The translations under genes were made by a program, and so were the position numbers. A stretch of DNA of 64,000 nt from Tubulanus polymorphus (lineage: Eukaryota > Animalia > Nemertea): contig NC_134030.1 of assembly GCF_964204645.1 (NCBI RefSeq), positions 6,118,778 through 6,182,777 of the forward strand. The letters run 5' to 3'. Below the pieces are notes generated by a model. It saw nothing but the letters and a program-made list of their open reading frames with translations, had not been told where the DNA came from and did not search any database. Positions within the stretch are counted from its first letter, which is position 1. Every line of letters starts with the position of its first letter. Shown one piece after another: positions 3,001 to 34,296 of this stretch.

Positions 3001-6000
3001 TTGTCGTCTAGGCAAAAATGAAAGTTTGGAACTCCCCAAACATCTCAGATCATCATCGAAGATGATGTAAAAAACACACAATTATTCTTTAAATCAGAAC
3101 TTGAATCAAAAGTACTGGTGACTTACTTATAGCGTAGTTGATGTAGAAACCGGTAGCTGTGCCACTACCGTCAGATCGGAATCGAATCCACAACTCATTT
3201 TCTGAGAACGTTAAATTTTTCGACGATATTTCCGAGCCGCAGAATCGACGCACGTCGCGACTACGTTCTCCGCCGTTACGAATTTCGAGAAAGTCTAACG
3301 CGCAATGTTCGTCAGTTTGTACATCGAACGAACTAGAATATAAGACCGCAATTTCTGAATCATGCACATGTTCGTGGAAAAATCGGGAAGAAAACCCTAT
3401 TAGTGACAAAATCGTACCTAACATCAAGTTGTATATGGTTTCCTTTTGGTGCGGTGATAGTCCAAACGCATTCATAATCTGGAGGATAGGCATCAGGATA
3501 ACTGGGACTGACGAATGTCCCTTGAATGGATGTCATTTTACCTCCACAAGCTGTCAATAAATAAGATTCGATGTTTACTCATAGGAATAGTACAAGTAAC
3601 TATGCCACGGTGACTTTTTTTGTGACGTGACATTTTCTGTCACCCCGCCCTACCTTCGTAAACACTCTTCTACACATTTCACATTCGTACTAACCTCGTG
3701 AGAATGTTGTATACACAGCACGGAAACCGTGATTCGACCGAGGTGATTGTTTACGGGACGACTGAGGAAACGTCGCCTGGAAAACTATCGTCATTTTCGA
3801 ACTCAACGAAACGATAGATGCTGGAACTGAATACCCGCAGTACCGGCCGTACGGTTCGGCACCGCTGTCAACCATGTCAGCTCCGCCCATATATATCGAT
3901 ACGCTATCGTACATACAATTATCATCGGCGCTCATATCTATATAGGTGAACGTGAAGGTTATCTTTGAAGCTGAAATGACAAGAAATGAATTCAGCAACT
4001 CTCGATCTAACACTACAATGTAACACTACTTCTACTCTTCAATTTTCTAAACCCTCTACACCATGTATATCTTTTCACCTAATAGAACTAGCGCAACACT
4101 ATTCAACTATGGAACCGGCGCTAGATTAGTAAACTTACCCGGGTCACCAGCATTTAAAGTCCAAATACAAGTTCCATTTTTGTGATATTCATCTGGATAA
4201 TTCGGTGAAAATATCTGTCCATCTTCACTAGCATCGCGTACACCACCACAAACTACACGAAAATATATCATAATATTGCTTAATCTTTGGAGCTATTTCT
4301 CGTTAAAATCAGTTACACGAAATCTAGGGTACTTACCCGTACGATAAGATGCTTTGAACCCACGCGCGCTGACTGAGCCATCAGAAGCCATTCGAAACAT
4401 CACTTCATTATTAGTTGCTGTATACACCGTCTGATTAGGCATTTTATTACCACAATGTTTCAATAGGGAAGGTGCAGTGATCGAGTTTCCATCAAATATC
4501 TGGAAGAATTATCATCAAAAACTGTTAAAACTGTTTCATGCACAAATTAATTCAGAAATTCATCGACGAATTCCATCACCCTCAACTTACCTGCAGGTAG
4601 TCATAGTTGCAGTTGTCATGGGTACCTTCGATGTCGAAATCTTCGATTGTTATCTGAACGACGTAATTTTCGTCGACTGTAACCTTCCATTCGCAGTCGA
4701 TATTGTGTCCGTAGTTACCGGGGTAACCTTGAGACGTAATAGTTCCAGACTTTGCCGTGAAGTTTCCACCACAACCTTCCAAAAGGAGGAAATCAATGCA
4801 ATTGTTTATTCAACAACTCGCAATACCTACTAATTGTTGAATTCTTTCGGATTTTTGAAACTGCCAAAAAACTCAGCAGTATAGTAGCAATATGATGTTT
4901 TTTCAAATTATCATCAGACATTTAACTTTATGTGATACCTAATACATGGAATAAGATATACAGTGAACAATACAATTACATATAATATCACCCAGCCCAT
5001 TTAGGACTTACAAATCATGGAGACTACAAAAATTAAATGATAATGGAAAAATGTCAAAATTATGTTATTCACTTATTGAATGAATAATTATGTCTTATAA
5101 CCCCTAAGCGTTGTATAAATGCTGTAAGTATGATATTTTCATACATTAGATTAACTGTCTTTAACTAATGATAAAGATAGAATACCTCCATCTATAACTT
5201 GATACGTGGCCTTGAAACCTTTTCCCGACTGCGAACGATCGCTCTTGAAACGAACGTACATATTATTCCCCGACGTCATGATCATTTGGCTTTGCGTCGT
5301 TTTGTGACAGAGTTTTGATATCAGAGGTGACGTCATATCCGGGCCTCCAAATATCTGAAATCGATGAAGAAATTCCAGCTTTCAAAGCGATCTCACATTT
5401 CTAGACCTGACTACCTTAGTATCTAACTTCGTGAGTAGTTTTTACCATAGTTTGATATCTAAAATAGTAGTTTAATTGAAAAACCATTCTGATTTTGAGC
5501 ATACTTCGATATTTCTTGGAGTAGAGTTCTTAAAAGGATAGTAACTACTCTCAAATAGTAATAGTGAAGTCGTAATAATTACCTCAATAAAGTCGTACTT
5601 GCATTCGGCGTTGTTTTCCAAATCAAGACCAAGTAAAGTGAGTTCAATTCTGCGTCCGAGTGATGTAGCAACGGTCCAAACACATTCGTGATAACTGGGA
5701 TAATAATCCGGATAACCAGGCGTCATGAACGTGCCCGAGTCACTCGTAAAATGACCTCCGCATCCTGAAATATTACGTATCAGTCAGGTCAATGAAAAGA
5801 TCGTAATCCAGGCGTAATTAATTAAGAACATACCATCAGTGATCCATTCTAAGCGGAATCCTCGATCAGCCACAGAACGATCCGATTTAAAATGAACCCA
5901 CAGTTTTTCGCCTTTCGAAGCGAACGGCGACGGCAAACTTCTGCCGCAATATTTTCCGATCAAGGCTCCATCACTTGAACCTTCTTTCAGCTATAAAAAA

Positions 6001-9000: not shown

Positions 9001-12000
9001 TGGAGCCGTCAGTGTACCACCACAATCTGCGCAGAGTATCAGAACAATGTACGAAGTGTATCATTTCAGTTAGCTTACTATAACATCTATCACTTAACAC
9101 TCATTCCACTCATCTACCAAAACTACTATGCATTAGTAGTGAAAGCTCATATAAACTCAAATAAAATAGCTAACCTATAAAGTACTGTCTCTATATTTTA
9201 CTGATATAACATCTGTTGAAAGAATAGGAAATTGTAAACATCGCATCTAAAATGCCACATTATACTTTTTTGGAGCTCTTAAAATTGAGGCCAAGTTAAA
9301 AGTTGTCTATAAAACTGGTTCCAGTAAATTAATTCAAACAAAATCAGTTTAAAAGAAATAATCAAGATGATTGTGGCAATTGTACAGGGTGGCCAGTTTA
9401 GATTAACTTTGTTTACCTGACTTGATCTACTAAGATTCCAATCCATTAACACAGTCAAATACGTAAGACATTGACATAACTGTTTGATTTTACGCATGAT
9501 GTACCGGTAGCAATCTCAACATATTTCTATCACTTTTCCCTGATTTTTCTGCTTTTTTTTGTACAAAATTCCCTGGTAAGTGGCCACCCTCTGTTGCAAT
9601 ATCATTGATAAGATTCCACATACCCCCAGTACTGCTAGTTGTTGTGTATTTAACTTTGAATCCTCTGTTTTCAGTGCTGCCGTCCGTTTTGAATTTCATA
9701 TATAATCTATGGGTACTGGAGTCGATCGCGCCAGGCATTTCACCTCCGCACAATCGTTTCAACATCGGAGAATTCGAAGAACCTCCATCACGAACCTTTA
9801 AATATAAACATGGCATTATTTCCGCATGCAAATCACCGGTAGATAAAGATACACGTAATGCCTAATAATAATCACAATCTAATCAGTGTTTAATAGCATA
9901 TTGACAATGCTACTGGGGCAGGATTCAAGAATAATCCGCCAGGGTCAATAGCGGTTACTGGATTACGACGCTTCTACATTTCAATTAAATTCAACTTCTC
10001 TCATTAGTAGATGAATTTTTATTGAAATCTATACCATAGAATGAGAATGTGAATCTCATATCTATCTGATGTCTGGTGATTTTCGGTTTTAGAACCCTAA
10101 AAGTCAAGTTCAAATCTAATTTAAAATGAACTAATTGTTACTATGAGGCAGTGAATTTTTGCACCATCTCGCGTGTGCAGTACCCTATTGCATAAATATA
10201 ACTTCTACTTTCAGCAGTCAAGTGATAAGTTGCGCGCCCAATTTCTCAAAGAAAGGTTATGAATGATTTCCAGGGGTAGTTAGGGTTGCAATTGCTCAAA
10301 GAAAGGTAAGGGTTGATTTCCAATCACTCCGCTGTTGTCACTTTACCTCAAGATAGTCGAATTCACAATCTACATCGCCTTCGACGTCGAATGCTTCAAA
10401 TGTGAGAGTAATACGAGACCCGATTTCTTGTTCGATTAGATATACACACTCAGTGTTGCTAGGATACGATTCGGGATAATACACCGACTGAATCACTCCT
10501 GTAGGATTTCTATAAGTTCCGCCACAAGCTACGAATAAAAAAAAGTTCTTAATTTCTTCAAACAAATCTATCGGCCCATCGAAAAAATAAGAAACTGGAT
10601 TTTAAATGGTGCTCACCTGTTGTGTAATGGATTTTGAAACCTTGACCTTCTGTCGATTCATCCGCGCGGAAGCGAATAAGTACGTTGTTACTGGTCGACA
10701 TGAATGGTGCGGGTTCTTCATTACCGCAATAACGACCAACAAATGGAGAAGATCCTAATTCTCCATCTCTCACCTGAAAAAACACATATTTCAGACCTTT
10801 CACTCAACTGTTCAACTGTTCCTTAATTATCTACAGGGCAGTGATAAGACTAAGCAAAAGTTTGATTTTTCTTATCGGCTGAAGCAGTATCATTTCGAGT
10901 TGCGAGTGTTGGGAAATTTTATAGCGAGTCCCTTTACAGCTTACAGATTATTATCCATCTTAAAAAATCTATTTATTGCGTGTGTAGCTCGCAGAGTCTC
11001 TTCAATTGTTGGAAAATGTCCAAGAATTTACAATAGATAGATGCATCCAGATATATGACTAACTGCAATCATCAAAATTTCTTAAATGATTAACAGCCAG
11101 GGACTCATGAATCTCTATCATTTAGTCATTTAGATATAAATTTCGAGTTAAAATACTCATGGTGACATCTTGCAGGGCCATTCATAAATATCAAGTCAAT
11201 TTAGCAATGCATGTGTGAATATACACACTCTGATGATTCCTTCAGTTGTAAATTTTGCCCGTTCCAGATACGGACCAAAATTAGTTACTAGTGGTATAGT
11301 GAATGCAGCTATTACAATTATTATCTTTGCAGAAAATAAGCCTAAATGACATCCCTGTATCTGACGCAAGTCTAGGTGATCTTTATAGAACTTAGAAAGA
11401 AATGGTAAAATCATCTACCTCGATGTAATCCCATATACAATCAGCATGGCCTTCTATATCAACGTCTACGAACGTGATGTTAACTCTTTCACCGACCGGT
11501 GCCGTAATCACCCATTCGCAGAATATCTGTCTCGTGTAACCTTGAGGATATCCGGGAGATGTAACGGTACCGGTGTCAGCGGTTACACGTCCTCCGCAGT
11601 TCGTTCCAGCTACAAAAAACGTTCAGATTTATAACAGGCTAGCACGGTGGCCATTTTCCCCTGATTTTTACATATGGTTTCATAAAATTACCCGAGTGAA
11701 TGTAAACAAAATGTTGAAATTTCATATCATTGAATCACATACTAGTGAAGAAACAAGATCAATAGCATTATCCAAATTTTCCAGGTGTTTGGTAAAATTT
11801 CCTGAGTTTTCTCTGATTTTTCTGATTCCCGAAGTTTTCCAGTTCAGTGGCCACCCTGGTTAGTGAAAGGCCAAGGTTCGAGAGCTAATAATGAGGGCAA
11901 GTAGGGTTTTAATTACCAGACACAGCCGCATAAGTGATCATAAATCCGCGATCAGAAGCGTTAGCATCCGAATGAAATTTGAGCCATGCAGTTTTTCCCG

Positions 12001-15000
12001 AAGTTGATATCGGCAATACTGTTCTCGTACCACAGAATTTTCCCAGCAAATTACTAGAAGCTTCTCCACCATCACGAATCTGAAATCATGATGACATAAT
12101 CCATTTGCATGCAGTGATTACTATTTTCATGATTATCGTTATCATTATTCATTATTTTGTTAAGGGAGTTATATACATATTGTACCAGTGATTTGGCTAT
12201 GTAATGTTGTACTCATTGCTTTTATTACGGCACTAATTATCTCCAATTAGGACCAGTATTGTATAACATATTTGTGCATATATATCACACATCATTATTC
12301 ATATAATCAAACTTCTGTATAAAAAGAATTACCTCAAGATAGTCATTCGTACAATTATTCTGTGAGAGTTCGATATGAAGCGATGCAAAAGTGAATAAAA
12401 ATTTTTTTCCAGGGTCGGCATTGAAGAGCCAAACGCAGTCAGAATTGTGAGGATAATTTGAGGGATATCCAGGACTCATCACCGTACCAGAATTCGATAC
12501 GAACGACCCCCCGCAGCCTGAAAATATCAACAATTATCGACCAACTTCAACAGATTGTGATTGAACATGAGATTAACCTACAGAGAATCCCAAAATATTA
12601 ACAAAAATATTTTACAGCTGGAAAATGTTTCCTTGAGGCAATAGTATTTTATTAGTTTGGTTTAGTAGTTTATCACTAGCAGTTTATCATCAAGGAAACA
12701 TTATCGGACTTACATAAATAATGATACCATAAAAATTGATACCTTATTTCTCCTAATCACGTGGAACATTCTGTAAAGTGCGATACAATTTGTAATCTGG
12801 TTCATTTCTACAACTGACGGGTCTGTTATGGTAAAATTAACCGTGATTTTTAAAAAAGTAATGTACAGGGTAGATAGGTGGCCGGCTGGGGCAACTTCCA
12901 ACTTCATTTTCATTATCATTGTGGGGTTCTCCATAGATTATCGTAATAACCTGGACTATAGTAGTTCTTATCAATACTTGTCGAACATGAGAACATTTAT
13001 AGATCTCAGAATCATTGAGAATCAACTCGGAAAATTATCTTACCTTCATCGATCGTATTCCAATTGAAAGCGAATCCCTCGTCGCTGGTCGACGAATCAG
13101 ATTCAAACTTGATTCGCATAAAATTCTGCGTCGTGTTGATCGGATTGCCGTTATTCGGTATATCCGTGCCGCAATACTGACCGATTACACGCGAGTTTAC
13201 GGTTGAACCATCGTAAATCTTGATATCGTCGTAGTCGCAATCTACATCATCTTCCAGGGCAAATTTAGTGAATTTCAATTGAATGATCTGTACAATGACA
13301 ATAAAAACAAACAGTTATTTAATAGTGCAACAAAGTAACTGTAATCACACCTGACAATGATCTCTAGGGTGAGAGGGTCGTGTTCTTACATTTTAGATTG
13401 TATCAATAAATAAATTCTCGATTTTAGAATTCTTTTAATTTGTAAATAGTGGGTTTTTATCTTATCATCTGTTCACCACGTTTGAGTGTGGTTATCGTAC
13501 TATTAACTGTAATCAGTATAGAATTTACTCAGGTAAGTGGGTACAAACGGACTGGTTACCACAAAGTGTTTGAGCTGGTAGTTTAATCAAAGTTTTGACT
13601 CTTCCGGAATACTGAGATACAAAAATTGTACAGAATTTGTGAAATGTATATATACATGTGATCCAGAATGACCTAGTTTTATTATTTTCTCATGTTTATT
13701 GTGGGATTCTTGTTATGTTATCGTCTCAACACGGATAGTGTTTTATCAATGGTGAACATTGTCCTTCCCTATATTATTCAATAACTTTTACAAAATGTCG
13801 AATCTTGGGGGCAAGTTGTATCGATTTGTATTTTGACGACAGTTTTTAATCATAGCTGATACACTAATATTGCATTTGAAATGTGACATACATCGGTATA
13901 GGGCGAATAATGCATTGATTTTGGGTCAATTTTGCGATAAACGGATTACAAGCACTGGAACAATTACAGAGTTTTCCAACAGATAAGGTTTTCATACGCT
14001 ACTTGCCATACTGCACGAACAGCATTGAAAATGCTCCAGGTATTCTTATTGCCATATATGGGATTACCATTAATTACTCTATTAATCGGAGTGGTCATAC
14101 TAGTGATACAGAAAAGCTTTTACAAAAGAAATGACGGCATACCAGCAGATATTCTGCGTCGAATGGGTGAGTATGAAAGTGATTGTATCTCATTTAAACA
14201 AACTTCGATTCTTCACGAAAATGCTCACACAATTTGCCGATTGTATTTTCACTTACTCCACAGGTAAAACTGGACGAAAGCTAGGAAAACAAGAACTACT
14301 CTACGTTTATGAAATAGAGTTTGAAAATAATCTTCTTGATAGTAACGCCATATTCCTCGAATCAAAAGTCGAACTAACTGAAAGAATCGTCGTTCGTTCG
14401 TTGGAGTTTCTATGGAAACGACATCCAATGTTACGAATGAAAATCAACAGTTTTGTCAACAACAGATGCCGTGAAGATGTTTACTTTTTTCAAGAAATTG
14501 GTGAAACACCGATTTTAGATTTTGAAACAGAAAACACTAACGATTGGATGCAAGTTCTTTATGATGAATTTAAGAGAAAGTTTGATATAAAAACTGGGCC
14601 ACTGTGGAGAGTGAAAATGTTACCAGGAGCGAAACAGGAGAATGGGAAATTTCAACATATTTTTTTATTTACATTTTTCCATTCAATCATTGATGGCACC
14701 TCAATCATTCACATATATCGAGAATTCATTGAGAATTTAGAAGTTTTATTGAGTGGATCTGAACCAATTGTGAAAAGTCTCCCAACTCTACCGTCAATAG
14801 AGGAAATATTCGCTGATGAGTTACGACCCAGTTTCACTGAAAAACTCATCAGCATTTTTAGGTCTGCAAACAATTACTGTTTCCCGCAACAACCGAGTAA
14901 TAATCAAACCGAAATAAGCAAAGATTTTGTTGACGCGTTTAAAGTGAATAAACCGCGATCAAGTCGGCTTTATCCAATAGAATTTGATGAAAATGAAACA

Positions 15001-18000
15001 GCTTTGATAATCAAGAAAAGTAAGAATATGGGAATACGTATACATTCCATCGCCACAGCAACAGCAGCAGTTGCTTTACGGAGACTGATGAACAAACACA
15101 GCGTCAAAGTTGGACAGAGTTTTAATCTGAAGACCAACAATCCAGTTTCACTAAGGAATGTCCCTCACAAGAGAATCAAAAATGATTCGATTGGATGCAT
15201 GATTCTCCTAGGACTAAATATTAGTGCATCTATACCACTAAATCCTACAGAATCAGATTTCTGGAAATTAGCATCACAGTTTCAAACGAAACTTCAAAAT
15301 GCTATAAATGACGGGGGCCACCTTAGAACGAAAAAACAGATGGATTTATGTAATGTTCTCAGTAAAGAGGCATCAATAGCGGCTCATCAACCTCGAGAAG
15401 ATTGGCAACGTTCAACGGATATAGTCATTTCTAACAGAGGCTCACATGAAGTCGTGCCTAAAAGTTCCGAAGGCAAAAACATAAAATTCCTGAAAACATT
15501 TTACGGAATAGGAACCTGCTACCACGACTACTATTGTTTGATGAGTATGTTTTTGTGTACGATTGATGGCAGACTTTCGTGGACGTTGCAATACCGTTCT
15601 CAACTGATGGCAGAAGATGTAGCAGCTGATTATTGTACAATGATCAAATCAGTAATCGCTGAATATTGTCATCAAAGTTAAATCTAGCACTACTATAATT
15701 ACAATTGCTGCCTGGCTATTCCTCGGCTTTGTTACCTGGCTGCATATGATGAAACTCCAGACTTATAAAGAAAGATTAAGTCGAAACGCTAAGATACATT
15801 GAATTTCATTTTTATCGTGGGATTTATTAGTTGGTAGTTGGTAATTTAGTATTATTAAAGATTTTTAATTTAGATAGTAAGAGGATATTAGATAAAAATT
15901 CTGAAAAGAGATAAAAGATATCTAATTTATATAGTAATATTTAACTAATAACATAATGTATTATAGTTCATATTTCTGATAATGAAATGTATGATTAGTC
16001 ACTTATTTGCAAGTTACTTATCATAATTATTACTTATAATTCATAACTAAACAATTAGCTTATATTATCTGTAAACTGTTTTAATTCTACTCTGATGCAC
16101 GGACGAATAAATACTGATCTGACAACTGTATGTTATTTGAATTTGTCTATTTCTTTAAAGGAGCTAGTTCCCCTCGCTCTGCAGCAAGCAACGGCAAACG
16201 AACACCCCGCACGACACATACCTTGCCGATAGTAGTAGATATTGTCCATACACAATATTTATCAGGTGGATATAAACCATTTAATGGGAATCGCACAGTT
16301 CCACTATTACCAGTCAAAGTACCACCACACGCTACAAATATATGATATTCACTCACATCATGCTCGCGTTTATAACCATTAAGATTATTGCTAATGACCG
16401 GCAATTTCAGCTTAGTTTAGTTTATTTCGCTCAGCAAAAAGACATTTGCTTAGAGCATAGAAAAATATTACAATACATCCGTAAATACATAAATATGTGT
16501 AGGATAGACAATAATATCACTTACATAAACATATATAGACATGGCTACAAGTTATACTATAAATTCAATTCACTTTTCCCATTTGCCCTTTCGGCACTAC
16601 TAGTACAATGAAAGTGTGAAGCTTACTTAAGTAGTAGGCTCGCCTTTTTAAATGAAGCAAATTCATCAATTCATATTAAAAATGTTACACGGAAGATTAT
16701 CGAGTCATTCCAAAAAATAATTTCATGCAATATACCATACTTACATTGTTGTTCTTCTTCGCAGAAGCGTCCGATGTAGTTGTCACGGCACGTGCATAGG
16801 AACGAAGATGAATCTAACGACAGACATGTTCCACCGTTCTGACACGGGTGGCTGTCACACAACAAAACACGCGTTTCACAGCGGTCTCCGGTGAAATGAG
16901 GTTTACATCGACAATAGTAACTAGCTCCGTTGTGCTGTTAAGAAATGAATATCAACACATTGTTTACAGGAAGATCTCGATTATTTTTACTTTGACTACA
17001 CTACACCACCATGGGATTGGACATCTTGTCTCATTTGGCGTGAACGAATGTCTCTATACCTTTGTTTACGTTTTTAATTCACAAATAGCTGCACTTACGA
17101 TACAAGATCCTTGGTTAAGACAAGGACTTATGTTACACTGATTGCTCGGAGCCTGGGTCACACTACCGCCAGTAGATCCACCATCGTGAGGTAAACAACC
17201 GAGCTGGCCTTCGCCATTCCCCACATAACCTGTAGGACACTGACATGATCGTCCAGAAATTCCTGCAAAATCGAATAAACAATGACGGCATTTGCTCAGG
17301 TCCATATTTACTGTTCATGATGACTTAGATAAATCGTTAACTTTGACTTAGAAACCTCCATCAATTATTCTCAACCCTGGAGTCTTATCTTCCGGATAAT
17401 AACACTTTTACTGTACCTGGAGCTTCTCTGCAGGTCGCTCTGGGATGACAACCTCCATTGTTCGTGCGACAAACTCCTTGCCAGATACAACTCTTTCCAT
17501 TACCGCTGAAACCTGCAATTTGTCATCACAACTATTCAACATAAGCTCATACTCTATCAAACTGAGGGATTGAAACTGAAGATAGAGCATCACACATACC
17601 AGGTGGACAATCTCCACATCTGAAAGATCCTATAGTGTTAATACACTCCACTCGGGGCGCTAGCGAGCAACCTCCGTTCATGTTTTCGCATTCGTTGATA
17701 TCGTAACAATGTACTCCGTTACCAGTGTAACCTGTTTTAACGTAGAACATAGCAGATAATAAATAAAACACATTCTCACGATTGTTTAAAGTGCAAATGT
17801 TCGGAGTGCGAACCTGGAGGGCAAGCTGCACAGTGATACGATCCAGGTAAGTTAATGCATTGAACTCGTGGATTCTGCGAACAAGGCGGATGATTAGAGG
17901 AACATTCGTCAACATCTTCAGTACAAGCAGGGCTTCCACTCCTGGTCGTCCATCCAACTTCGCATAAACATTTATATTTTGCCTGAAAGCAACGCCAAAA

Positions 18001-25098: not shown

Positions 25099-28000
25099 AT
25101 GGATCACAAAATCAAAGACGGAAGCAAATCTTCCGCGAGTAGAAAGAAAAAGGAAAACAATAACGACGTCCATAAAGACGGTACGGCTTCAGAAAACCGT
25201 AAAAACTACTTGAATGGAAATTCAATTCATCTCCATTTTTTCAACTTTTTTTTTGTGTTGTTTACTCCATATTTTTGAGGTCACTTTATCAAAAGGAAAT
25301 GCTAGTAGCAACGAAGCTACGTATATTTCTTACGGCAATAGTCTTCACGCCGATTATTCGACGTCTTACTGTGTGGCTTATATTGATGTGATGAAGTACT
25401 TACTAACTAACTACACAGGGATCGGCCTGCTTGTGTTTTGTGTTTGATTGACTTAAGGTGTATGGCAGCTTTTTGGGTTTGAATTTTGATGTAGGCAACA
25501 GACGAATTCTAGGAATGAGCTATGTAACATATATGATCAGAAATTATTGATATTTTCATATATGTGGGAGTGACTTGTTTGTATGAAGTCTGTGTGTATA
25601 AAAATAATATGTCAGTTGATTTTGTCTAGTTTCGGCCCCGCACTTCACCAAGAAGTGCCGGCCCTTGTTCACAAAATCGCATGTGCTATTTGTGCAATTG
25701 TCTGCATCCACTGTGGTGGATGAACCCCTTAAAGAATTGTGTATGGTCGAATTGCAGTATCATTATTACTGCATAGTAGACAATTTGAATGAAAATTCTG
25801 TTATATTCACTGTATCAATTCAGGAAAGAAACTACAGAATGGCGAGTCTAAATTGGGTAAAGATCCCTACGCCTGGGAAGATGATCAGTCTCCAGAGTAA
25901 GTAATTCTCACTGTAAGAGGAGTTAATTATCAACTTTTGCTTTTTGATTGTCACTTTAAGAAGTTTCTGCCAATTTCGTCTGTCTCTTTGATGGCAGAAA
26001 CCTTCTACTGAGAAGAGCATCATTATTCCAGATTACTAATGCACCTTATTGAAAATATATTTGGCCTACTAATTTTTCGACTGACGATGTGTTGTAGAAC
26101 TGTTGTTCGGGATGGTGAACTGTAGAATTGATGTTCTGTTTTTTTAGACCGGTGACTTTAATGTCGGAAGACGATCGAAAACGTCATGCAAGAAATAAAC
26201 TCGAAAAACATCGAAAAGATAAAATCCGAGGTTTCGTGAATCAGTTGATCGATTTATTGCCACCAATATTAACGGGGAAAAAGACGCAGGTATTTTGTAT
26301 TCATTGAGTATTCACATGTTTTAAAGGACCAATTCATGCAGATTTTAGGCGACCAAAATATGTCTTTGTTTTTTATGTAATCCAGAGTTCATTGTATCTA
26401 TCATGAAATTGATTAAAAATCTTCCAATTCCAGTCAAATTTTTTGGCCAATGAATTGTTATTTCCAAAGTTATTAGTGTTTACGCTATAGACTTCAATAT
26501 CAAAGATGTAATTTGGATTAAGATGTAACAGTAATGAGTTGTATTGAAATTGATGATCTTAATTTTCATAGAACACAAATGAAGTGTTGGAAAGAACCGT
26601 CAATTACGTGAAAGAATTGAAAGGTCAGAATGAGCAGTTAATGAGAAATAATGGAGATGAAATCCAAGGTATGTAATCGAACTGAATGATTGATGAATTT
26701 GATCTCTATAGGTCTTATAGTTTGTTCATAACCTCGCGTTATTTGTTTCTAGCTCAAGAAATCGCTCAGTTGCGGAGAGATTTGGAGAAAGTTACGAATG
26801 AAAGGGATCATTTGGACAAAATTCTGGAGCAAGCAGGTACGATAGATTAAAACAGACCCGACTACGACTACTTTTTGAGTGGAGGGTAGTTAGCAATGAG
26901 CTCAACTACTCCCGAAAATATTTTAACAGTTCTCAAAATCAGAGTAATTTCTAGTTCATTTTCATAATTACTCTTATTTTGGGATAACTGCTGCAATTAG
27001 AGATATCAAGTGGTTAGATCCATTTAAATATAAAGGCAACAAATAAGATGTTTCGCTTCACTATATTTTCGCTTCGCTATTCGTCATGTTTCAGGAATGG
27101 TTGGACTCAATTCTTCCAACCTGATGTGGCAGAAAAATCGACAATGTTCAATGAACGCGGAACGACTGATGAAAATGGCGTCTGCTCACAAACAAACGGA
27201 CGACGAAGCGAATACGACGAACAACGACGACGTGAAAATCAATAATAAACCGAAACGTAATCGATCGGGCGGGAAAACCCTGAAAACTCACATAAACGAA
27301 TCGCAGCAAAACAGCGATTTCGTATCATTGGCGACGGCGCGTTCGTTAGCCGATCAGATCTCAGTCGTGACGTCGCACGCCGGATTCGAACTGTCCGGTA
27401 ATCCAGCGCTCGTATCGCCGTCGGACAGCGCGTCGAAACTATCGTTCGTCGACTCGAATGGAATGTTGATGGTTTCGCCGACCGCTGCCGCTCAGAGTTT
27501 ATTCTCGAACGTCGAAACGGATTCGACCTCGAAAAACTACGCGAGCAGCACCGGCGAAATCAACGAAGAAATGATGGATGCGACTGCGTGCGATAATAAT
27601 GACACAGCGTTACAGACGTTAGCCTCGTTGGCGACCAGTTCGCAGATTCTCGCCGGTAGTTCGAGTAATTCCGACGTGACGATGATGCCGGGTGCGGCGG
27701 CGGCGTCGATGTCGCAGCAAGGAGCTCCGGTGTCGATAACCGGTACGCAGGTTACTCAATCGGTCGGCATGCCGATCATGTCGACCGATCCTAAGTCGGG
27801 AGAACTGACTTCGGTCGTCGGTAATCTCGGATTCCCCCAGCAGCAGCAGCAGCAGCAGCAATCGGCGCCTGGCATTAATTCAAACATTCCAATTCCGTTG
27901 ATGCAACAAAATACTCAGCAGAACTCGGCCGCATCGAGTTTACAAGGTACGTTGGTTATGCAGAACGGACAGTTATTATTGATCAAAGATCCGGTCATGC

Positions 28001-31000
28001 CTCTACAACAACAACAGCAACAACAACAGATGGTGCCGCCAGACACCGCTGCTACTGATGTTAGTAAAACGGGCGGCAAAGATGAAAAAGACAGTAACGT
28101 GACCGATCAGCTGGTAGCATCCCAGCAGCAGCAGCAGCAGGCTGGGATGATGTTTCCCGGTGGTTTAATACCTCGTCCTCCGCTCGGTCAGTCGATGTTA
28201 AACGCCGCCGGTCAACAGATCGTCCCGCTCAGCAACGGACAGTTCGGCATCGTGAACAACGCGCAACAACAATCGTTACCGCCGACGATCCTCGGCTCGC
28301 ACCTCGGAATACAACCGACCAATCAAATACCGGGCTTGGTTCAGCCGCCCGGTAGTCTGCCGCAGGCGTTGATCTTACCGAACGGACAGGTCGTACCGGT
28401 CGTTACGCAACCGAACTTACTGTTTCCGCATTCGCAATCGGCGAACAACGGAATCATCGTGCCCGGCAATTCCGGCGCGTTGATGCAAATGCCACCAGGT
28501 GGCGCCGGTATGATGCCCGGGATGAATTTACTGCCGTCTGCGTCGAGTATGGCCGGCGGATTGCTAATGACGACGAGCGTAACGACGGTGACGACGTCGA
28601 CGGTCGCTTCGTCGTCGTGTAACTCGTCGATGCAGGTCGTGTCGAGCCACCAGATGGCGCCGATATCGACAGCCGCGCCGTCGCAATCCAACGCCACAAA
28701 CACGGCGACGACGAATTCCAATCGGCTACCGACGACGCCTTCGCAGATGCTGCCACCGATCGGACAACCGATGGTGATGAATCCGGCGACCGGACAGCCG
28801 CAGGTTCTCGTCGGTCAGCCGCAGTTATTGATGAATCAAAATCAGCTGAATCCGATCGGGATGAACGCGTTCGCCGGTCAGAATAATCTCGCGATGCCAA
28901 TCGGTCAATCGGTGGTGCCGTCTAGTGTCAGTACGGGAACCGATCCGAATCGAAAATCGACGCCCGTTTCGACGGTCGCGATGAGTGGGAACTTAGTGAA
29001 CGCTGCTACAGCTTCTACGTCCGTAACGTCGGGAACTCCTCCTGTATCAACTTCTAGCGGACCTACCACTCTCCGTGTCGTCTCTTCTAACGGAACATTC
29101 CTCATCACGTTGCCACCTGGTGTCAACCCGCAGAACTTAATCATCGATCCGAACAATCTGGCCGCGTTGCAGCAGCAGGGAAAACCGGGAATGATTCCGC
29201 AACCGGCTACGACGGTTACCGGGAACGTACCGGTTTCCGGACTCTCCACCGGAGTCGGCGGTAAAAATAAAAAAGGCCAACGCGTATTAATGCCTAAACC
29301 TCCTAATCTCGGAAACGGAGCGTATATCCCTCCGATTACAGTGTGGCCGATGCCGATGCAGCAGCAGCAGCAGCAGCTACAACAACAACAATCTCAGCAA
29401 CAGACCTCAGAAAAACGGACGAACAAATCACGACAGACGACGGACGGTGTTACCGCGGCGACTAAACAGACGGATAAATCGAACGATAAAAAGTCGAACG
29501 AAAGCGGTTCGGGGAGTGTAGCGACGGACGAAACGCTGGAGACCGACGCCAATTCCGATAATACTCCCGTCACCACGGTTACCGAGGATATTCTTGCGAA
29601 AGCGGCCGAATCGATATTCGCGTCGAGCATGTCGGATATTTCACCGACGATTTACGATAACGACGACAACAGTTTATACATCGATACGGCGAGTACGGCT
29701 GCCGTAACGGAGCCACAAACCGACGAGTCGGTCGCCGCTCCGATAGCTGAACCGGTCGAACCACCTGTCGTCGCGACCAGTAAAAAACCGGCCGATAAAT
29801 CGCGTTCGCGTAAGAAGAAATCGAAAGCGTCGAAAGAGAAGTTGAAATGCGATTCAGTCGAGATACCGGCAGCGACGGCGGTCGAAGTGGAAAAATCAGT
29901 CGAAACGATGCCGTGTTTGATATCGGAGCCGGTTTATACGACGCCAGCACCGCTACCTGCGACTGATTGCAGTAAATTAGGAGTGAGTGACGAGAAACAT
30001 GAGAAAATTATTTCACCTTCAAAACAGCAGCAGCAGCAGCAACCGGCACCATCTATGCCCATATTAGTACCAGAAGTAACGAACATTACGAATAAACAAA
30101 TGACGAAGCAGGAGCGTAAAGAAGCTCGTCGTTTGGCTAAAAAGAAAAGAGCCGAAGAAAAACTCGCGGCAGCCGCTGCTGCTGCTGCAAATGCGGCTAC
30201 CGTAGTCACGCCGATGGTTAAGGTGGATGCGGACGCTCCAGTTGCGATGGAGACGGAATCGGACAGCGCTAAAGAGAACAAAAATGAAACGAAAATCGCC
30301 GCGAATGAAGATCCCGGTCAACGGTTAGTGTCCGATGGTTTACCGGATACGATCACGTTTACGGAAAGCGAATTGTGCGACGTTTTAGACCAGGTCGAAA
30401 ATCTCGGACTGACGTTACAACCGGAGGAGCCGTCGCCTCCGAAACCGCCAGCGGTCGTCGCGGACACGACGCCGAATAAGTCACGCGGTCGTAAGAATAA
30501 ATCATCGAATCGCGACGGTCAACCGGTTAGTAAAAAGCGCAAGCATAATAACAAATCGTCGTCGTCATCTGGGGCGGGTGAATTCGACGTCGACGTTCAA
30601 GATGATATTCTACCGAACGATACCGGATTACAAATCGATTTAGATCCTCCGTCGTTAGAGATTAACGAACAATACGCGAGTCCGGGTCACGTCGTCGCTC
30701 CGGGGTCGACGGTGAACGCGTCGCCGCAAATTCCAAAAACCTCGACGACCGAAACGTCGAACGAATCGCCGCAAATCGACCAGCAGACAATCGACGAGGA
30801 CGATTCTGCCGAGAAAGAAAACTCGAACAACGTCGATAGTTTCTTCGATTCGATTTCGGATATGATAAATCCGAGTCCGCCGCCGCTGACGGCGCCGTCG
30901 TTACGAGAAACTCGCGCGTCGTCGACGGACATCGATAAAACGACGGCGTCGGTCGATAATTTAGAAACGTCGTTGAACGAGACGAATTTGAATATTTTGT

Positions 31001-34000
31001 CGAGTATTGCCGCGGAGGCGAGCTCGACGCTGGAGGCGATGGAACAATTGCGAAAATCGACGGAAGATCTGCGTATGCCACCCGACGATAAACAACACGA
31101 TCATCATCACCGGGCGGAATCGCCGATTCATATGAGACCCGATTCGCCAATGCGGATTCCGATGGATACGCCGATGCCGCCCGTCTGTCGGTCTCCGCCG
31201 CCGCGATTGAATTCTCCGCCGCAGCTGCAGTCACATTCCATGGCGATCGATTCACCGTCCGGTTTACCGTCGCCGCCTACGACGCATCACTTACCGAACC
31301 AGAGGCACGATAATAAAATCGTTAAACATTCTCCAGTTCACGCGGCCAATAACACGATGTTGTCGCCACCGACGAGTATAATGTCGCCTCCCGGTCAGAA
31401 TCTCGTGATGAAATCGTCGCCGGCTTCGTCTAGTTACACGAGTATGAACCCGTCGTCGTTGCAGCCCGATTCGCAGTCGCCGATGTCGCAATCGGGAGGA
31501 GATCGACATCGTCACGAGTCGTACGGCAGTCAGAACATGGGACCGTCGAGTATCGATAGCGCGTTATCGTCGCAGCACAGCGTACCGTCGCACGGTACGT
31601 CGAATACGACCGCGTTAAAACATCAATCCGCGCAGCTGGCAACTCATTCCGGTCTGACGGCTCCGTTTCTCAGTCATTCGGCCGAGAGTCTATTCAGTCC
31701 GGCTAGCGCGCCGTCGCATCGTAAAGAACCGATGAAAGCTCAAGAACCGTACATGGACACGGCTGACGTTCCGCCTCAGCAACAATCGGCGGCGCCGTCT
31801 CTACCGCCTTCCGTTACTAAGGCATCGCCGTCGAAATCGCCGGTTCGCTCGTCCGCCGGTAATATCACCGGTAACCATAACAACAATACTAGTGCTAATA
31901 ATAGTAAACATTCGCGCAAACAGCAACAACAATCGGGAGGGTTGCCATCGGCGGCGGCTTCGCAATCGAATTATTATTCCACGGAGAATCTATTAATGTC
32001 TAATCGTCACCCGGATAGCATGCCGCCTGGTGGCGGAATGTTCAACCAACCGCAGGCGCCGCCGCCGACCGCGAGCGCGAATAGTAATATGCAAAACAAT
32101 ACGGCGTGCGGAATGCAACGCGGTGGTAACGAGAATAATTTCAACATGCAATCGTTTATGCCGAATATCGCGTCGGATAGTTCGTGTACGGGACCGTTCA
32201 GTATGGCCTCGACGTTACCGGCGTTCTCGTTCAGTTTATCCGGTACGTCGACGTCGAATCCGAATTCTCTTCCGCCGCAGTTTCCGTTCTATCCGCTTCA
32301 CCCATCGATCTCTCAACAGGGGGAGCCACCGGCGCTTAATATGCCTCCGTTTCCTCCGCAGCAGCAGCAACAACAACAACAACAAGACAACCGTAACTCG
32401 TCGATCGGACCGCCTCCGCCGAGACCGACCAAACAATCGAACGATCCTCATTTCAACAATAGTAACTACGGTAGCACGTCGCCGCGGGATTCGATGAGAA
32501 ACGCGCGGCCGAATCAGTTCATGGAAGCGGTGGCGCCCCCTACTCAAGGAAAAGGCCCGCAGTCGTCTGCTAACGATTTCACGGCGATGAATCATAATCG
32601 TAATGATTTGAATTCGTCGGCTCCTAGTATGAACGCCGCCGGCGGACCACCGCCGTTTATCGATATAAATCAACCGATGATGACCGGTCCGGGAAGTTCG
32701 TCCGGCTCCCGATTGGCTAATGATATGAATAGATTACCAAATCATTACACCGACCTGAGTCACGCTCGTCCCGAAATGAATAGAAATCGTCCTCCTCCGC
32801 AGCAACCGCCCGCTCCGCAGCAGGTCGTGCCACCGCCGAAGAATGCGAGTCGACCGCCGAATATGACTCCACCGGCGAGTCGACCACCCGCGAGTCGACC
32901 AGTTGAGATTAGTTCTAGTCACAGACGCCAGTCCGATAGTGGTCCTCGTCTTACCGAAATTGGCCAATCGCAAGCCAGATTATCCGACATCGGCCAATCG
33001 CAAGGTCCGACGAGGATGGATCTGAATCGATCTCCCGGTCGAGTTCGCGATTCGAGCCAATCGCAGAAGAGATTGACGGAAATCGGACAACCGCCGGCGC
33101 CACCTAGAACTCGCTCTAATCCGACGACGAGTCAGTCACCTCAGATTATAAACAGCATGTTTTATCCACCGTCGTTTCCTAATCAGGTGTCTCCAGCCAA
33201 TCAGATGACCAGCCCGCCTTTACATCATCCAAATCGGCGGCCGGGACATCCCGGTGATAACATGCGGACTAATTGCCCTCCTAACTTCCATCCTCCTCCG
33301 CCTGATTTCAATCCAGTTTTGAACTTCGGCGCCGGAGGTTTCGATCCTCCGGCGTTGGAGTTGAATGTTCGAGATACTCCCGGGAGTGGCGGGCCTTCGT
33401 CGACGACGCAACCGAACTATCATCCGCCGGCGCCACCGCAGGCCAGTCCGCGAACTACGAGTAAAGCGAACCGCGAGGCTAACCGCGCGAAGGGTAACAC
33501 TACGAGTTCGAGTCGACAGAGTCCGGCGAATCCACCGGCTCCGTCGAAAAGTCAAAAGTCGCGTTCGAAATCGAAAAAACAAGCCGCAAATAAACCGTAC
33601 GAGATGGACACTAATTTAGGAAATTCGATCTTCGAATCGGGCCGAAGTATGACGCCGTATTTCCATCTCGGCGGAATGCCTTCCCCGCCGTCGCGAAACA
33701 TACAAGGCGAAGGCCCGACGTATCTGCCGGGGAATCTATTCCCGGGAGGTCCGCGCCCGCTTTCCAACGCGAATTCCGTTCAACATAAAAACTCTGAGAT
33801 GAACATGAATCCGCCGTTCAATTCGTTATTTCAAACTCGGCCGCAAAACGGATTAGGTTTGAATTTCCAGCCCGGATTCGGTATGAATCCGATGCATCCG
33901 AATCACCCGAATTCTCCCTCGATTCCTCCTCATTCGAACAGTCTATCGATGCCGCCTCATCTGTCGAACTTCAATCTGAATATATTCTCCGATATCAGCA

Positions 34001-34296
34001 ACCCCGGCCAGCCGGATTCGATGAACATATCCCCGATTAAATTTCCCCACGGTAACCCGATGATACCCCCGCAGCCGGGTATGGAACACAACGCTTTACA
34101 ACATCACCACCAGGGGGCGATATATCACAATCGATCTCATCCGCAAATGTTACATAATATGGGCCTGTTCGGTCACGGGCACCCGGATTTGACCGGGCGT
34201 TCGATGGGCCCAGCAGGAATTGCTCAATTTCACGGACATGGTTCGGGCCCGGCTTTCGGAATGCCCGGATTAAACTTCAACATGCACGAGCATTAA
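25099..34296 (+). CDS. USF3: USF3 (KIAA2018)-like bHLH-ZIP transcription factor, ~2559 aa
   Basis: Phase-consistent exons 25099-25180, 25824-25896, 26148-26289, 26572-26668, 26753-26836 and 27095-34296. The bHLH-ZIP reads RKRHARNKLEKHRKDKIRGFVNQLIDLLPP...NEVLERTVNYVKELKGQNEQLMRNNGDEIQAQEIAQLRRDLEK. It is followed by one giant Q/P/S-rich exon, the same architecture as vertebrate USF3. Confidence 0.85.

What the first reader, a model, noticed from the sequence alone, without database searches (positions are those of the whole stretch)
14031..15681. Membrane-anchored condensation/AATase-type acyltransferase gene nested antisense inside cubilin
Seen: the two overlapping ORFs in the track (14025 and 14131) join into one gene through a canonical phase-1 intron (14167-14263). 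The product is ~517 aa, with an N-terminal hydrophobic anchor and an intact HSIIDG catalytic motif plus RxLGxxE, RHPMLR, PLWRV, PVSLR and SNxG. It sits on the opposite strand within the 2.9-kb intron that splits cubilin CUB1. Known: HxxxDG CAT-fold enzymes (NRPS C domains, yeast Atf1/Sli1, mycobacterial PapA5/WS-DGAT) are characterised mainly in microbes, fungi and plants. Inference: this is an uncharacterised animal small-molecule or lipid acyltransferase, possibly of horizontal origin, which may be co-regulated with the absorptive or excretory epithelium that expresses cubilin (uptake coupled to acylation or detoxification).
Basis: partly seen in the sequence, partly recalled or inferred. 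Interest (0 to 1): 0.8.

Follow-up and report, generated by a model that had tools for sequence, protein, structure and literature searches.

The report
Membrane-anchored acyltransferase gene inside cubilin intron
This is a real, spliced and transcribed ribbon-worm gene for a membrane-anchored acyl-transfer enzyme, but it is one of at least 16 copies of an old, little-studied family shared with corals, acorn worms and a brachiopod, not a recent bacterial import.

Summary
Exon 1 (14031-14166), a GT..AG phase-1 intron (14167-14263) and exon 2 (14264-15681) encode a 517-aa protein. It is identical to NCBI's uncharacterized LOC141907891 of Tubulanus polymorphus. One assembled contig of a public run skips exactly those 97 bases, so the splice is real.

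The protein has an N-terminal hydrophobic helix, passes the Pfam thresholds for AATase and Condensation, keeps HSIIDG, and folds as a condensation-domain (chloramphenicol-acetyltransferase-like) enzyme. It lies antisense in the ~2.9-kb intron that splits a cubilin-like CUB domain.

- The genome carries at least 16 intact paralogues, all with HxxxDG. dN/dS is 0.25-0.35 in the nine pairs where dS could be estimated.
- Full-length relatives occur in three hemichordates, stony corals, an octocoral (Erythropodium 'AT2') and Lingula.
- In a rooted tree all Tubulanus copies form one clade inside a bilaterian group.
- So a nemertean-specific horizontal transfer is not supported. A very old bacterial origin of the whole family stays open.
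- The sister paralogue is not in cubilin, and nothing links the gene functionally to cubilin.

The scan had already flagged this family elsewhere in this genome (s1-492869). Verdict: a new member of a known but biochemically uncharacterised kind.

The parts
13992..14030 (+). Minimum 5' untranslated region. It holds no ATG before 14031.
   Evidence: The spliced contig of run X2 begins at 13992; sequence read.
14031..14166 (+). Exon 1 coding part: residues 1-45 plus the first base of Gly46. It encodes the N-terminal hydrophobic anchor (about residues 2-27, 14034-14111) followed by K28/K32/R33.
   Evidence: hydropathy; model helix 2-35.
14167..14263 (+). Phase-1 spliceosomal intron, 97 nt, GTGAGT...CAG.
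   Evidence: Sequence. Skipped by one X2 contig with GT..AG ends and retained in DNA run X1. The same intron position occurs in paralogues P0002, P0018, P0032 and P0088.
14264..15681 (+). Exon 2 coding part: residues 46-517 plus the TAA stop. This is the whole catalytic two-lobe domain.
   Evidence: Pfam AATase 50 bits (cut-off 22) and Condensation 39.4 bits (cut-off 30.6). AlphaFold2 model pLDDT 83, pTM 0.85. Foldseek matches to condensation and epimerization domains, E down to 8e-25.
14680..14697 (+). HSIIDG, the HxxxDG catalytic motif (His185, Asp189).
   Evidence: Codons read. H185 and D189 are invariant in the 16-sequence family alignment A1. HxxxDG is kept in all 16 Tubulanus paralogues.
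15430..15441 (+). SNRG motif (Asn436, Gly438) in the C-terminal lobe.
   Evidence: N436 and G438 are invariant in alignment A1.
13012..13278 (-). Open frame holding the host-gene exon for the C-terminal half of a CUB domain (cubilin-like). Splice sites not mapped.
   Evidence: Pfam CUB 4.6e-15, profile positions 41-109. Best solved match is cubilin 3kq4 at 2.6e-28.
16147..16404 (-). Open frame holding the host-gene exon for the N-terminal part of the same CUB domain (CGG...[11 protein letters not shown]). Splice sites not mapped.
   Evidence: PDB search: start of PCPE-1 CUB at 3.4e-07 and cubilin at 0.0017. EGF exons at 16671-16865 and 17547-17957 lie upstream on the minus strand.

Best explanation
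The locus is a functional two-exon gene of the ribbon worm Tubulanus polymorphus. It encodes a 517-aa single-pass membrane-anchored, stand-alone enzyme of the condensation-domain (chloramphenicol-acetyltransferase-like) fold. Shown: the gene model, the splice, transcription, the fold, the intact HxxxDG motif, family membership, and purifying selection on the family's younger duplicates. Inferred from the chemistry established for this superfamily (NRPS condensation domains, PapA5, yeast Atf1): His185 acts as general base on a hydroxyl or amine acceptor, which attacks an acyl thioester to give an ester or amide. The donor is most likely acyl-CoA, because no carrier-protein partner is in sight. 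Also inferred: the N-terminal helix followed by Lys/Arg residues would place the catalytic domain on the cytosolic face of an internal membrane, probably the ER, as for microsomal P450s. That would suit a hydrophobic acceptor such as a terpenoid, sterol or lipid alcohol. The gene belongs to an old animal family with a local expansion to at least 16 copies in this genome, which fits a specialised-metabolism tailoring role. Its position inside a cubilin intron is most likely an accident of where this copy landed.
For: Gene model and splice. First ATG of the transcript contig at 14031. Pfam AATase and Condensation above threshold. Model pLDDT 83, pTM 0.85 with N-terminal helix 2-35. Foldseek PDB matches to condensation-fold proteins (AzeD 8e-25, TycB3 E domain, SrfA-C C domain). 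Nearest Atlas structures are an arthropod AATase/Condensation cluster (TM 0.79), bacterial PapA5-type and fungal AATase clusters. Invariant R50, E56, W160, H185, D189, P222, N436 and G438. At least 16 intact paralogues, all with HxxxDG. dN/dS 0.25-0.35 in nine paralogue pairs. Named relatives in Saccoglossus, Glandiceps, Ptychodera, Porites, Acropora, Erythropodium ('AT2') and Lingula. Full-length alignment to AT2, E 2e-28. Reviews say an acyltransferase gene lies with a terpene cyclase and a P450 in the Erythropodium cluster (PMC10548852, PMC12282579); whether that gene is AT2 I could not check. Bacterial relatives sit next to glycosyltransferase, PKS and sulfotransferase genes. Rooted tree with Tubulanus copies as one clade inside a bilaterian group.
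Against: No enzyme of this animal family has a demonstrated reaction in the papers I could read, so donor, acceptor and ester-versus-amide are all inferred. The residue before the catalytic His is Phe (FHSIIDG), where the family consensus has HH. Membrane topology and ER location rest only on hydropathy and flanking charge. dS against the nearest paralogue is saturated, so selection on this particular copy was not measured. RNA evidence is one assembled contig from a run whose type is not on record. No biosynthetic partner genes lie near this copy.
Confidence: 0.8

Rival explanations
1. Recent horizontal transfer: the gene was acquired from a bacterium in the nemertean lineage, as the first reader suggested was possible.
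For: In the word-index search the best hit outside Tubulanus was a Candidatus Schekmanbacteria protein (30% identity, E 1e-43) with the same length and N-terminal helix. Most animal members have intron-free coding sequences.
Against: The exhaustive search found about 100 stand-alone relatives, including named proteins of hemichordates, corals and a brachiopod. All 16 Tubulanus copies form one clade (SH-aLRT 99) within a bilaterian group, and the bacterial protein does not group with them. A tree holding all presumed animal rows together is not rejected and scores better (p-AU 0.72). GC is 0.35-0.39, equal to the flanks. A spliceosomal intron is shared by the paralogues. The copies are spread over eight chromosome-scale contigs.
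Confidence: 0.04
2. Ancient horizontal transfer at family level: a membrane-anchored PapA-like acyltransferase from a bacterial glycolipid or polyketide cluster entered an early animal ancestor. It was then inherited vertically and expanded. This concerns origin only and is compatible with the best explanation.
For: Rooted on NRPS condensation domains, an anchor-less bacterial clade is sister to the clade that holds all animal rows plus the anchored Schekmanbacteria protein. With the animals constrained to one clade, that bacterial protein lies outside them and the likelihood improves. Coding sequences are intron-free in Porites, Ptychodera and Lingula. The bacterial genes lie in typical operon-like clusters.
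Against: Related stand-alone families exist in arthropods, fungi and plants (Atlas clusters) and were not placed in the tree, so descent from an early eukaryote with losses is not excluded. Only one anchored bacterial member was found, so transfer from animal to bacterium is equally possible. Most tree rows carry no taxon label. A scan of prokaryotic genomes with P0003 found no close relative.
Confidence: 0.3
3. Functional coupling with the host gene: the nested acyltransferase is co-regulated with cubilin and acylates or detoxifies cargo taken up by cubilin-expressing epithelium.
For: Only the nested antisense position.
Against: The sister paralogue (44% identity) lies on another chromosome beside an astacin-like metalloprotease gene, with no CUB exons seen in the 20 kb inspected by eye. 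The other 14 copies are also elsewhere. In run X2 the acyltransferase has depth about 21, while the laid part of the neighbouring cubilin exon (16226-16300) has none (contigs show presence, not absence). The predicted cytosol-facing domain would not meet endocytosed cargo directly (inference).
Confidence: 0.08
4. Catalytically dead or decaying copy: a young, redundant member of an expanded family with no activity of its own.
For: The family is large and redundant. The residue before the catalytic His is Phe rather than His. dN/dS for this copy could not be measured.
Against: A 517-codon frame stays open in DNA of about 36% GC. All eight invariant family residues are kept. The transcript is spliced and assembled at depth about 21. 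This copy and its sister are 44% identical, so it is old yet intact.
Confidence: 0.07

Closest known systems
Marine-invertebrate membrane-anchored stand-alone condensation-like acyltransferases, e.g. 'AT2' of the octocoral Erythropodium caribaeorum (P0047) and uncharacterized proteins of Saccoglossus, Glandiceps, Ptychodera, Porites, Acropora and Lingula
   Same: Full-length homology at about 500 aa. N-terminal hydrophobic helix in most members. Shared GRxLGxxE, RHPLLR, GPLWR, HxxxD and SNxG motifs. One clade in the rooted tree.
   Different: Only 22-31% identical to members outside Tubulanus. This copy carries an intron after the anchor exon, whereas the Porites, Ptychodera and Lingula genes are intron-free. 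It is not beside terpene cyclase or P450 genes, unlike the acyltransferase that reviews describe in the Erythropodium cluster. No member has a published reaction that I could read.
Bacterial PapA5/PapA-type polyketide-associated acyltransferases and their relatives, e.g. P0003 in a Candidatus Schekmanbacteria PKS-glycosyltransferase-sulfotransferase cluster
   Same: Stand-alone two-lobe HxxxD enzyme. Predicted-structure TM scores 0.72-0.84 to PapA5-family clusters. P0003 shares the length, the N-terminal helix and 30% identity.
   Different: The Pfam PapA_C match is below its threshold (22.6 against 30 bits). The gene is eukaryotic, with an intron, and is not in an operon-like cluster. No PKS or carrier-protein partner is evident.
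Fungal alcohol acetyltransferases (Pfam AATase PF07247; yeast Atf1/Atf2/Sli1)
   Same: Passes the AATase gathering threshold (50 against 22 bits). Fungal AATase clusters are close by features (0.98) and by structure (TM 0.73-0.82).
   Different: No fungal sequence was placed in the trees here. The Pfam match covers profile positions 117-436 of 500 only. Use of acetyl-CoA is not implied.
NRPS condensation and epimerization domains (Pfam PF00668)
   Same: Same fold and catalytic motif position. Foldseek E values of about 1e-20 to the TycB3 epimerization and SrfA-C condensation domains. Condensation match of 39.4 bits against a 30.6 cut-off.
   Different: Not part of a multidomain synthetase and has no adjoining carrier or adenylation domain. 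It has a membrane anchor instead. NRPS domains form the outgroup in the tree.

Membership tests
Condensation-domain / CAT-like acyltransferase superfamily | Significant profile match to PF00668 or PF07247 above the curated cut-off | tested here: met
   AATase 50 bits (cut-off 22) and Condensation 39.4 bits (cut-off 30.6).
Condensation-domain / CAT-like acyltransferase superfamily | Two-lobe pseudo-dimeric CAT-like fold | tested here: met
   AlphaFold2 pLDDT 83, pTM 0.85. 285 PDB matches at E <= 0.001; every match listed is an NRPS or PKS condensation-fold domain or protein (C, E or X domain, AzeD, CmnI).
Condensation-domain / CAT-like acyltransferase superfamily | HHxxxDG catalytic motif with the second His and the Asp | tested here: met
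   FHSIIDG at 14677-14697. H185 and D189 are invariant in A1. The first His is Phe in this copy.
Condensation-domain / CAT-like acyltransferase superfamily | Acyl transfer from a thioester to a hydroxyl or amine | not testable with these tools
   Needs an enzyme assay.
Animal membrane-anchored stand-alone condensation-like acyltransferases (includes Erythropodium AT2) | Full-length homology and clade membership with named animal proteins | tested here: met
   Rooted tree. Clade test p-AU 0.72.
Animal membrane-anchored stand-alone condensation-like acyltransferases (includes Erythropodium AT2) | N-terminal hydrophobic anchor before the GRxLGxxE motif | tested here: met
   Best 19-residue hydropathy 2.39 at residue 8. 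50 of 89 stand-alone relatives of 470-600 aa reach 1.8 or more; the bacterial anchor-less clade does not.
PapA5 / PapA_C family (PF16911) | Profile match above the curated cut-off | tested here: not met
   22.6 bits against a cut-off of 30, E 7.8e-05. Structural likeness only.
Wax-ester synthase / DGAT (WS_DGAT) | Match to the WS/DGAT profiles | tested here: not met
   No WS/DGAT family among the Pfam hits up to E = 1.
Recent bacterium-to-animal horizontal transfer | Nearest relatives bacterial, to the exclusion of other animals | tested here: not met
Recent bacterium-to-animal horizontal transfer | Foreign base composition or lack of host gene features | tested here: not met
   GC equals the flanks. 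Spliceosomal intron confirmed by a spliced contig. 16 dispersed paralogues.
Cubilin (host gene) | EGF repeats followed by a long run of CUB domains, with cubilin as best match | tested here: met
   EGF_CA and EGF exons come before CUB exons on the minus strand. Cubilin 3kq4 is the best solved match at 2.4e-40 and 2.6e-28. The full-length gene was not reconstructed.

The most novel reading that the evidence does not exclude
The marine-invertebrate family descends from a membrane-anchored bacterial PapA-like tailoring enzyme that entered an early animal ancestor. Its 16-fold expansion in Tubulanus would then supply ER-anchored acyltransferases for still unknown acylated defensive metabolites, made by the worm itself rather than by symbionts.
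Probability: 0.2. Interest if true: 0.6.

Novelty: new member of a known kind. Interest (0 to 1): 0.35.

Why it matters
Animals were long thought to make few specialised small molecules themselves. Work on octocorals has shown animal-encoded terpene clusters that include acyltransferase genes, according to reviews PMC10548852 and PMC12282579. An octocoral protein deposited as AT2 is a full-length homologue of this nemertean gene. The results here show that the same enzyme family occurs in nemerteans, hemichordates, stony corals and a brachiopod, and is strongly expanded in Tubulanus. That gives a concrete set of candidate tailoring enzymes to follow when looking for host-made acylated natural products in ribbon worms. 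The specific claims that made the finding look striking, horizontal origin and coupling to cubilin, do not hold up.

Tried and rejected
- Recent horizontal transfer was rejected on distribution, tree, composition and intron evidence.
- Contamination was rejected. The gene lies on a chromosome-scale contig (window at C6:6.12 Mb), has a spliced intron, and has 15 dispersed paralogues.
- A retrocopy as the source of the intron-less contig was rejected. The genome search found only the two-exon locus at 100% identity, and DNA run X1 shows no joint.
- The search for related loci with the family alignment failed because no stretch was conserved enough. With the bacterial protein P0003 it found no relative in the prokaryotic genome collection, so the bacterial range of the anchored form is unknown.
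- Scesa et al. 2022 (PMC10262820), which should describe the Erythropodium acyltransferases, is not held. Three further paper searches found no biochemical test of a family member, and a search for the Pfam accession returned only plant and fungal genome papers by title.
- The sponge acyltransferase OroG (PMC12833800) does form amides from acyl-CoA. Its protein family is not stated in the passages of the text or supplement that I searched, so I draw nothing from it.
- dN/dS of this copy against its sister failed because dS is saturated.
- Co-expression with cubilin could not be tested: only one reads call was allowed, and it returned contigs only.
Exon-wise references were used for Pfam, NCBIfam, PDB and the word search. 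The full-length steps used the stored database protein P0001.


Full report
**1. Is the thing there?**

Yes. In the sequence the first ATG is at 14031 and exon 1 ends at 14166. The next bases are GTGAGT, the intron ends ...CCACAG at 14263, and exon 2 runs to TAA at 15679-15681. The 97-nt intron is phase 1: G from 14166 plus GT from 14264-14265 makes Gly46.

Exon 2 (window:14266-15678) and exon 1 (window:14031-14165) were searched apart. The word-index search returned a stored protein, P0001, 517 aa, named by NCBI 'uncharacterized protein LOC141907891 [Tubulanus polymorphus]'. All later full-length work used P0001.

**2. Is it transcribed and spliced?**

Four public runs of the same organism were laid on 13500-16300.
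- Run X1 is contiguous DNA with no joint.
- Run X2 has one 1566-nt contig, depth about 21, covering 13992-14165 and 14263-15654. It skips 97 nt with GT..AG ends. Shifted by one base, which fits equally well, this is 14166/14264.
- X2 has no depth at 13782-13969 or 15662-16037.

The genome search found no intron-less copy. The contig is therefore best read as cDNA of a plus-strand transcript. The run's type is not on record, and contigs cannot give strand or level, so this is good but not final evidence.

**3. What the protein is**

Exon 2 passes the Pfam thresholds for AATase (50 bits, cut-off 22) and Condensation (39.4 bits, cut-off 30.6). PapA_C is below its threshold (22.6 against 30).

An AlphaFold2 model built on a 16-sequence family alignment has pLDDT 83 and pTM 0.85. 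It shows a helix at residues 2-35 followed by a two-lobe alpha/beta domain. Foldseek against the PDB gives 285 matches at E <= 0.001, and every match listed is a condensation-fold domain or protein. The best are AzeD (8e-25), the TycB3 epimerization domain and the SrfA-C condensation domain.

In the ESM Atlas the nearest structures are a 349-member arthropod 'uncharacterized' AATase/Condensation cluster (TM 0.79), bacterial PapA5-type clusters and fungal alcohol acetyltransferases.

The family alignment has invariant R50, E56, W160, H185, D189, P222, N436 and G438. HSIIDG lies at 14680-14697. The N-terminus has a 19-residue hydropathy maximum of 2.39 and is followed by K28, K32 and R33.

**4. 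Surroundings**

On the minus strand, in the host gene's own direction, come:
- EGF_CA (17547-17957) and EGF (16671-16865);
- the start of a CUB domain (16147-16404);
- the rest of a CUB domain (13012-13278);
- further CUB exons (9490-9831, 3089-3493, 886-1377).

Cubilin is the best solved match for two of these exons, at 2.6e-28 and 2.4e-40. The acyltransferase gene thus sits antisense in the roughly 2.9-kb intron that splits a CUB domain of a cubilin-like gene, as stated. GC of the gene (0.35-0.39) equals that of its flanks.

**5. It is not alone**

A six-frame search of the window's own genome found 16 loci on eight contigs. There are tandem sets on C11 (three), C5 (three) and C2 (two).
- Every locus has an open frame of 458-524 aa holding the large exon, and every one keeps HxxxDG.
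- Where database proteins exist (P0002, P0018, P0032, P0088), the intron sits at the same place, just after the anchor exon. It therefore predates the expansion.
- Nei-Gojobori dN/dS for nine paralogue pairs is 0.25-0.35, which indicates purifying selection.
- Against its sister (44% identity) dS is saturated, so this copy's own constraint was not measured.
- The scan's notebook already holds a note on a tandem trio of the same family elsewhere in this genome (s1-492869).

**6. Who else has it**

The exhaustive profile search found 1256 proteins at E <= 0.001 and 195 at E <= 1e-10. About 100 are stand-alone proteins of roughly 500 aa.

Cluster look-ups named members from these animals:
- Saccoglossus kowalevskii (two), Glandiceps talaboti (two) and Ptychodera flava;
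- Porites (three species) and Acropora (two species);
- Lingula anatina;
- 'AT2 [Erythropodium caribaeorum]'.

AT2 aligns with P0001 over the full length (E 2e-28) and keeps all the motifs. Two reviews state that in the Erythropodium eunicellane cluster a terpene cyclase is colocalised with a P450 gene and an acyltransferase gene (PMC10548852, PMC12282579). I could not read the primary paper. So I do not know whether AT2 is that clustered gene, or whether any AT was assayed.

Bacterial relatives exist in two forms.
- P0003, from a Candidatus Schekmanbacteria assembly, has the same length and N-terminal helix. It lies between a sulfotransferase gene and BNR/MFS genes, downstream of PKS, hydrolase and glycosyltransferase genes.
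- A clade without the anchor includes P0066, which sits 59 bp after a UDP-glycosyltransferase gene on a compact scaffold.

**7. Origin**

A tree of 71 rows, rooted on three NRPS condensation domains, gives this order:
- the anchor-less bacterial clade branches first;
- next comes a clade (SH-aLRT 93) with all animal rows and P0003;
- inside it are coral groups and a 44-row group (91) with the hemichordate, Lingula and Tubulanus rows;
- all 16 Tubulanus copies fall in one 24-row clade (99), together with unlabelled metagenome proteins.

Two of those unlabelled proteins come from a single sample, on gene-poor, eukaryote-like contigs. Holding all presumed animal rows in one clade, apart from every bacterial row, improves the likelihood by 9.8 and is not rejected (p-AU 0.72).

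This pattern is what vertical descent since at least the cnidarian-bilaterian ancestor predicts. It leaves a much older exchange with bacteria open, in either direction. There are three caveats. Most rows have no taxon label. The trees are quick searches under LG+G4. The arthropod, fungal and plant relatives were not included.

**8. Cubilin coupling**

Nothing supports it beyond position. The sister paralogue lies on another chromosome. Its only recognisable neighbour within 10 kb is an astacin-like metalloprotease gene with a TSP1 repeat (read by eye, no Pfam scan). In X2 the laid part of the adjoining cubilin exon has no contig, while the acyltransferase is covered. That is weak evidence, because contigs do not prove absence.

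**9. Mechanism and verdict**

By analogy with the superfamily, His185 should deprotonate an acceptor hydroxyl or amine for attack on an acyl thioester. With no carrier-protein partner in sight, acyl-CoA is the likeliest donor. The anchor and its flanking charges suggest a cytosol-facing enzyme on the ER, suited to hydrophobic acceptors. These steps are inferred, not shown.

It is already annotated, as 'uncharacterized', and belongs to a family recognised in corals. It shows no sign of recent horizontal origin or of linkage to cubilin function. I rate it a new member of a known but biochemically uncharacterised kind, of moderate interest.

Noticed in passing
G000 C11:3121873-3128277, C5:4933936-4939782, C2:21865568-21873164 (loci L003-L006, L008, L010): Tandem sets of three, three and two paralogues of this acyltransferase. 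All are intact with HxxxDG, and dN/dS is about 0.3. I did not check whether P450, terpene cyclase or PKS genes lie beside them.
   Followed up: partly
L015:1-15707 (Candidatus Schekmanbacteria contig MGDD01000230.1): The anchored bacterial homologue P0003 lies in a cluster of PKS (KS-AT...ACPS), hydrolase, glycosyltransferase, sulfotransferase, the acyltransferase, then BNR and MFS transporter genes. From memory, this layout recalls mycobacterial sulfolipid loci. It is the only anchored bacterial member found, and in the constrained tree it lies outside the animal clade.
   Followed up: partly
L016:950-2503 and L022:1281-2792 (JGI sample 3300040954): Two intron-free family members that fall in the Tubulanus clade lie on gene-poor 3-4 kb contigs of one metagenome sample. 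This is probably DNA of another invertebrate host, perhaps a nemertean. The sample's identity is unknown to me.
   Followed up: no
window 13680-13760 and 15843-16200: Many short contigs with several mismatches pile up here at high depth in the DNA run, and one joint goes back from 16161 to 15843. These look like interspersed repeat copies flanking the gene inside the cubilin intron.
   Followed up: no
window 27097-34296 (+): A single uninterrupted 2399-aa open frame. It is very rich in Gln, Pro, Ser and Thr with poly-Q runs and has no obvious domain by eye. It was not searched.
   Followed up: no
L024:5215-7383 (-), G000 C1 about 20.531-20.533 Mb: Next to the sister paralogue lies an astacin-like metalloprotease gene (HELMHTVGFYHEHTRPDRD motif) with a thrombospondin type-1 repeat exon. 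It was recognised by eye only.
   Followed up: no
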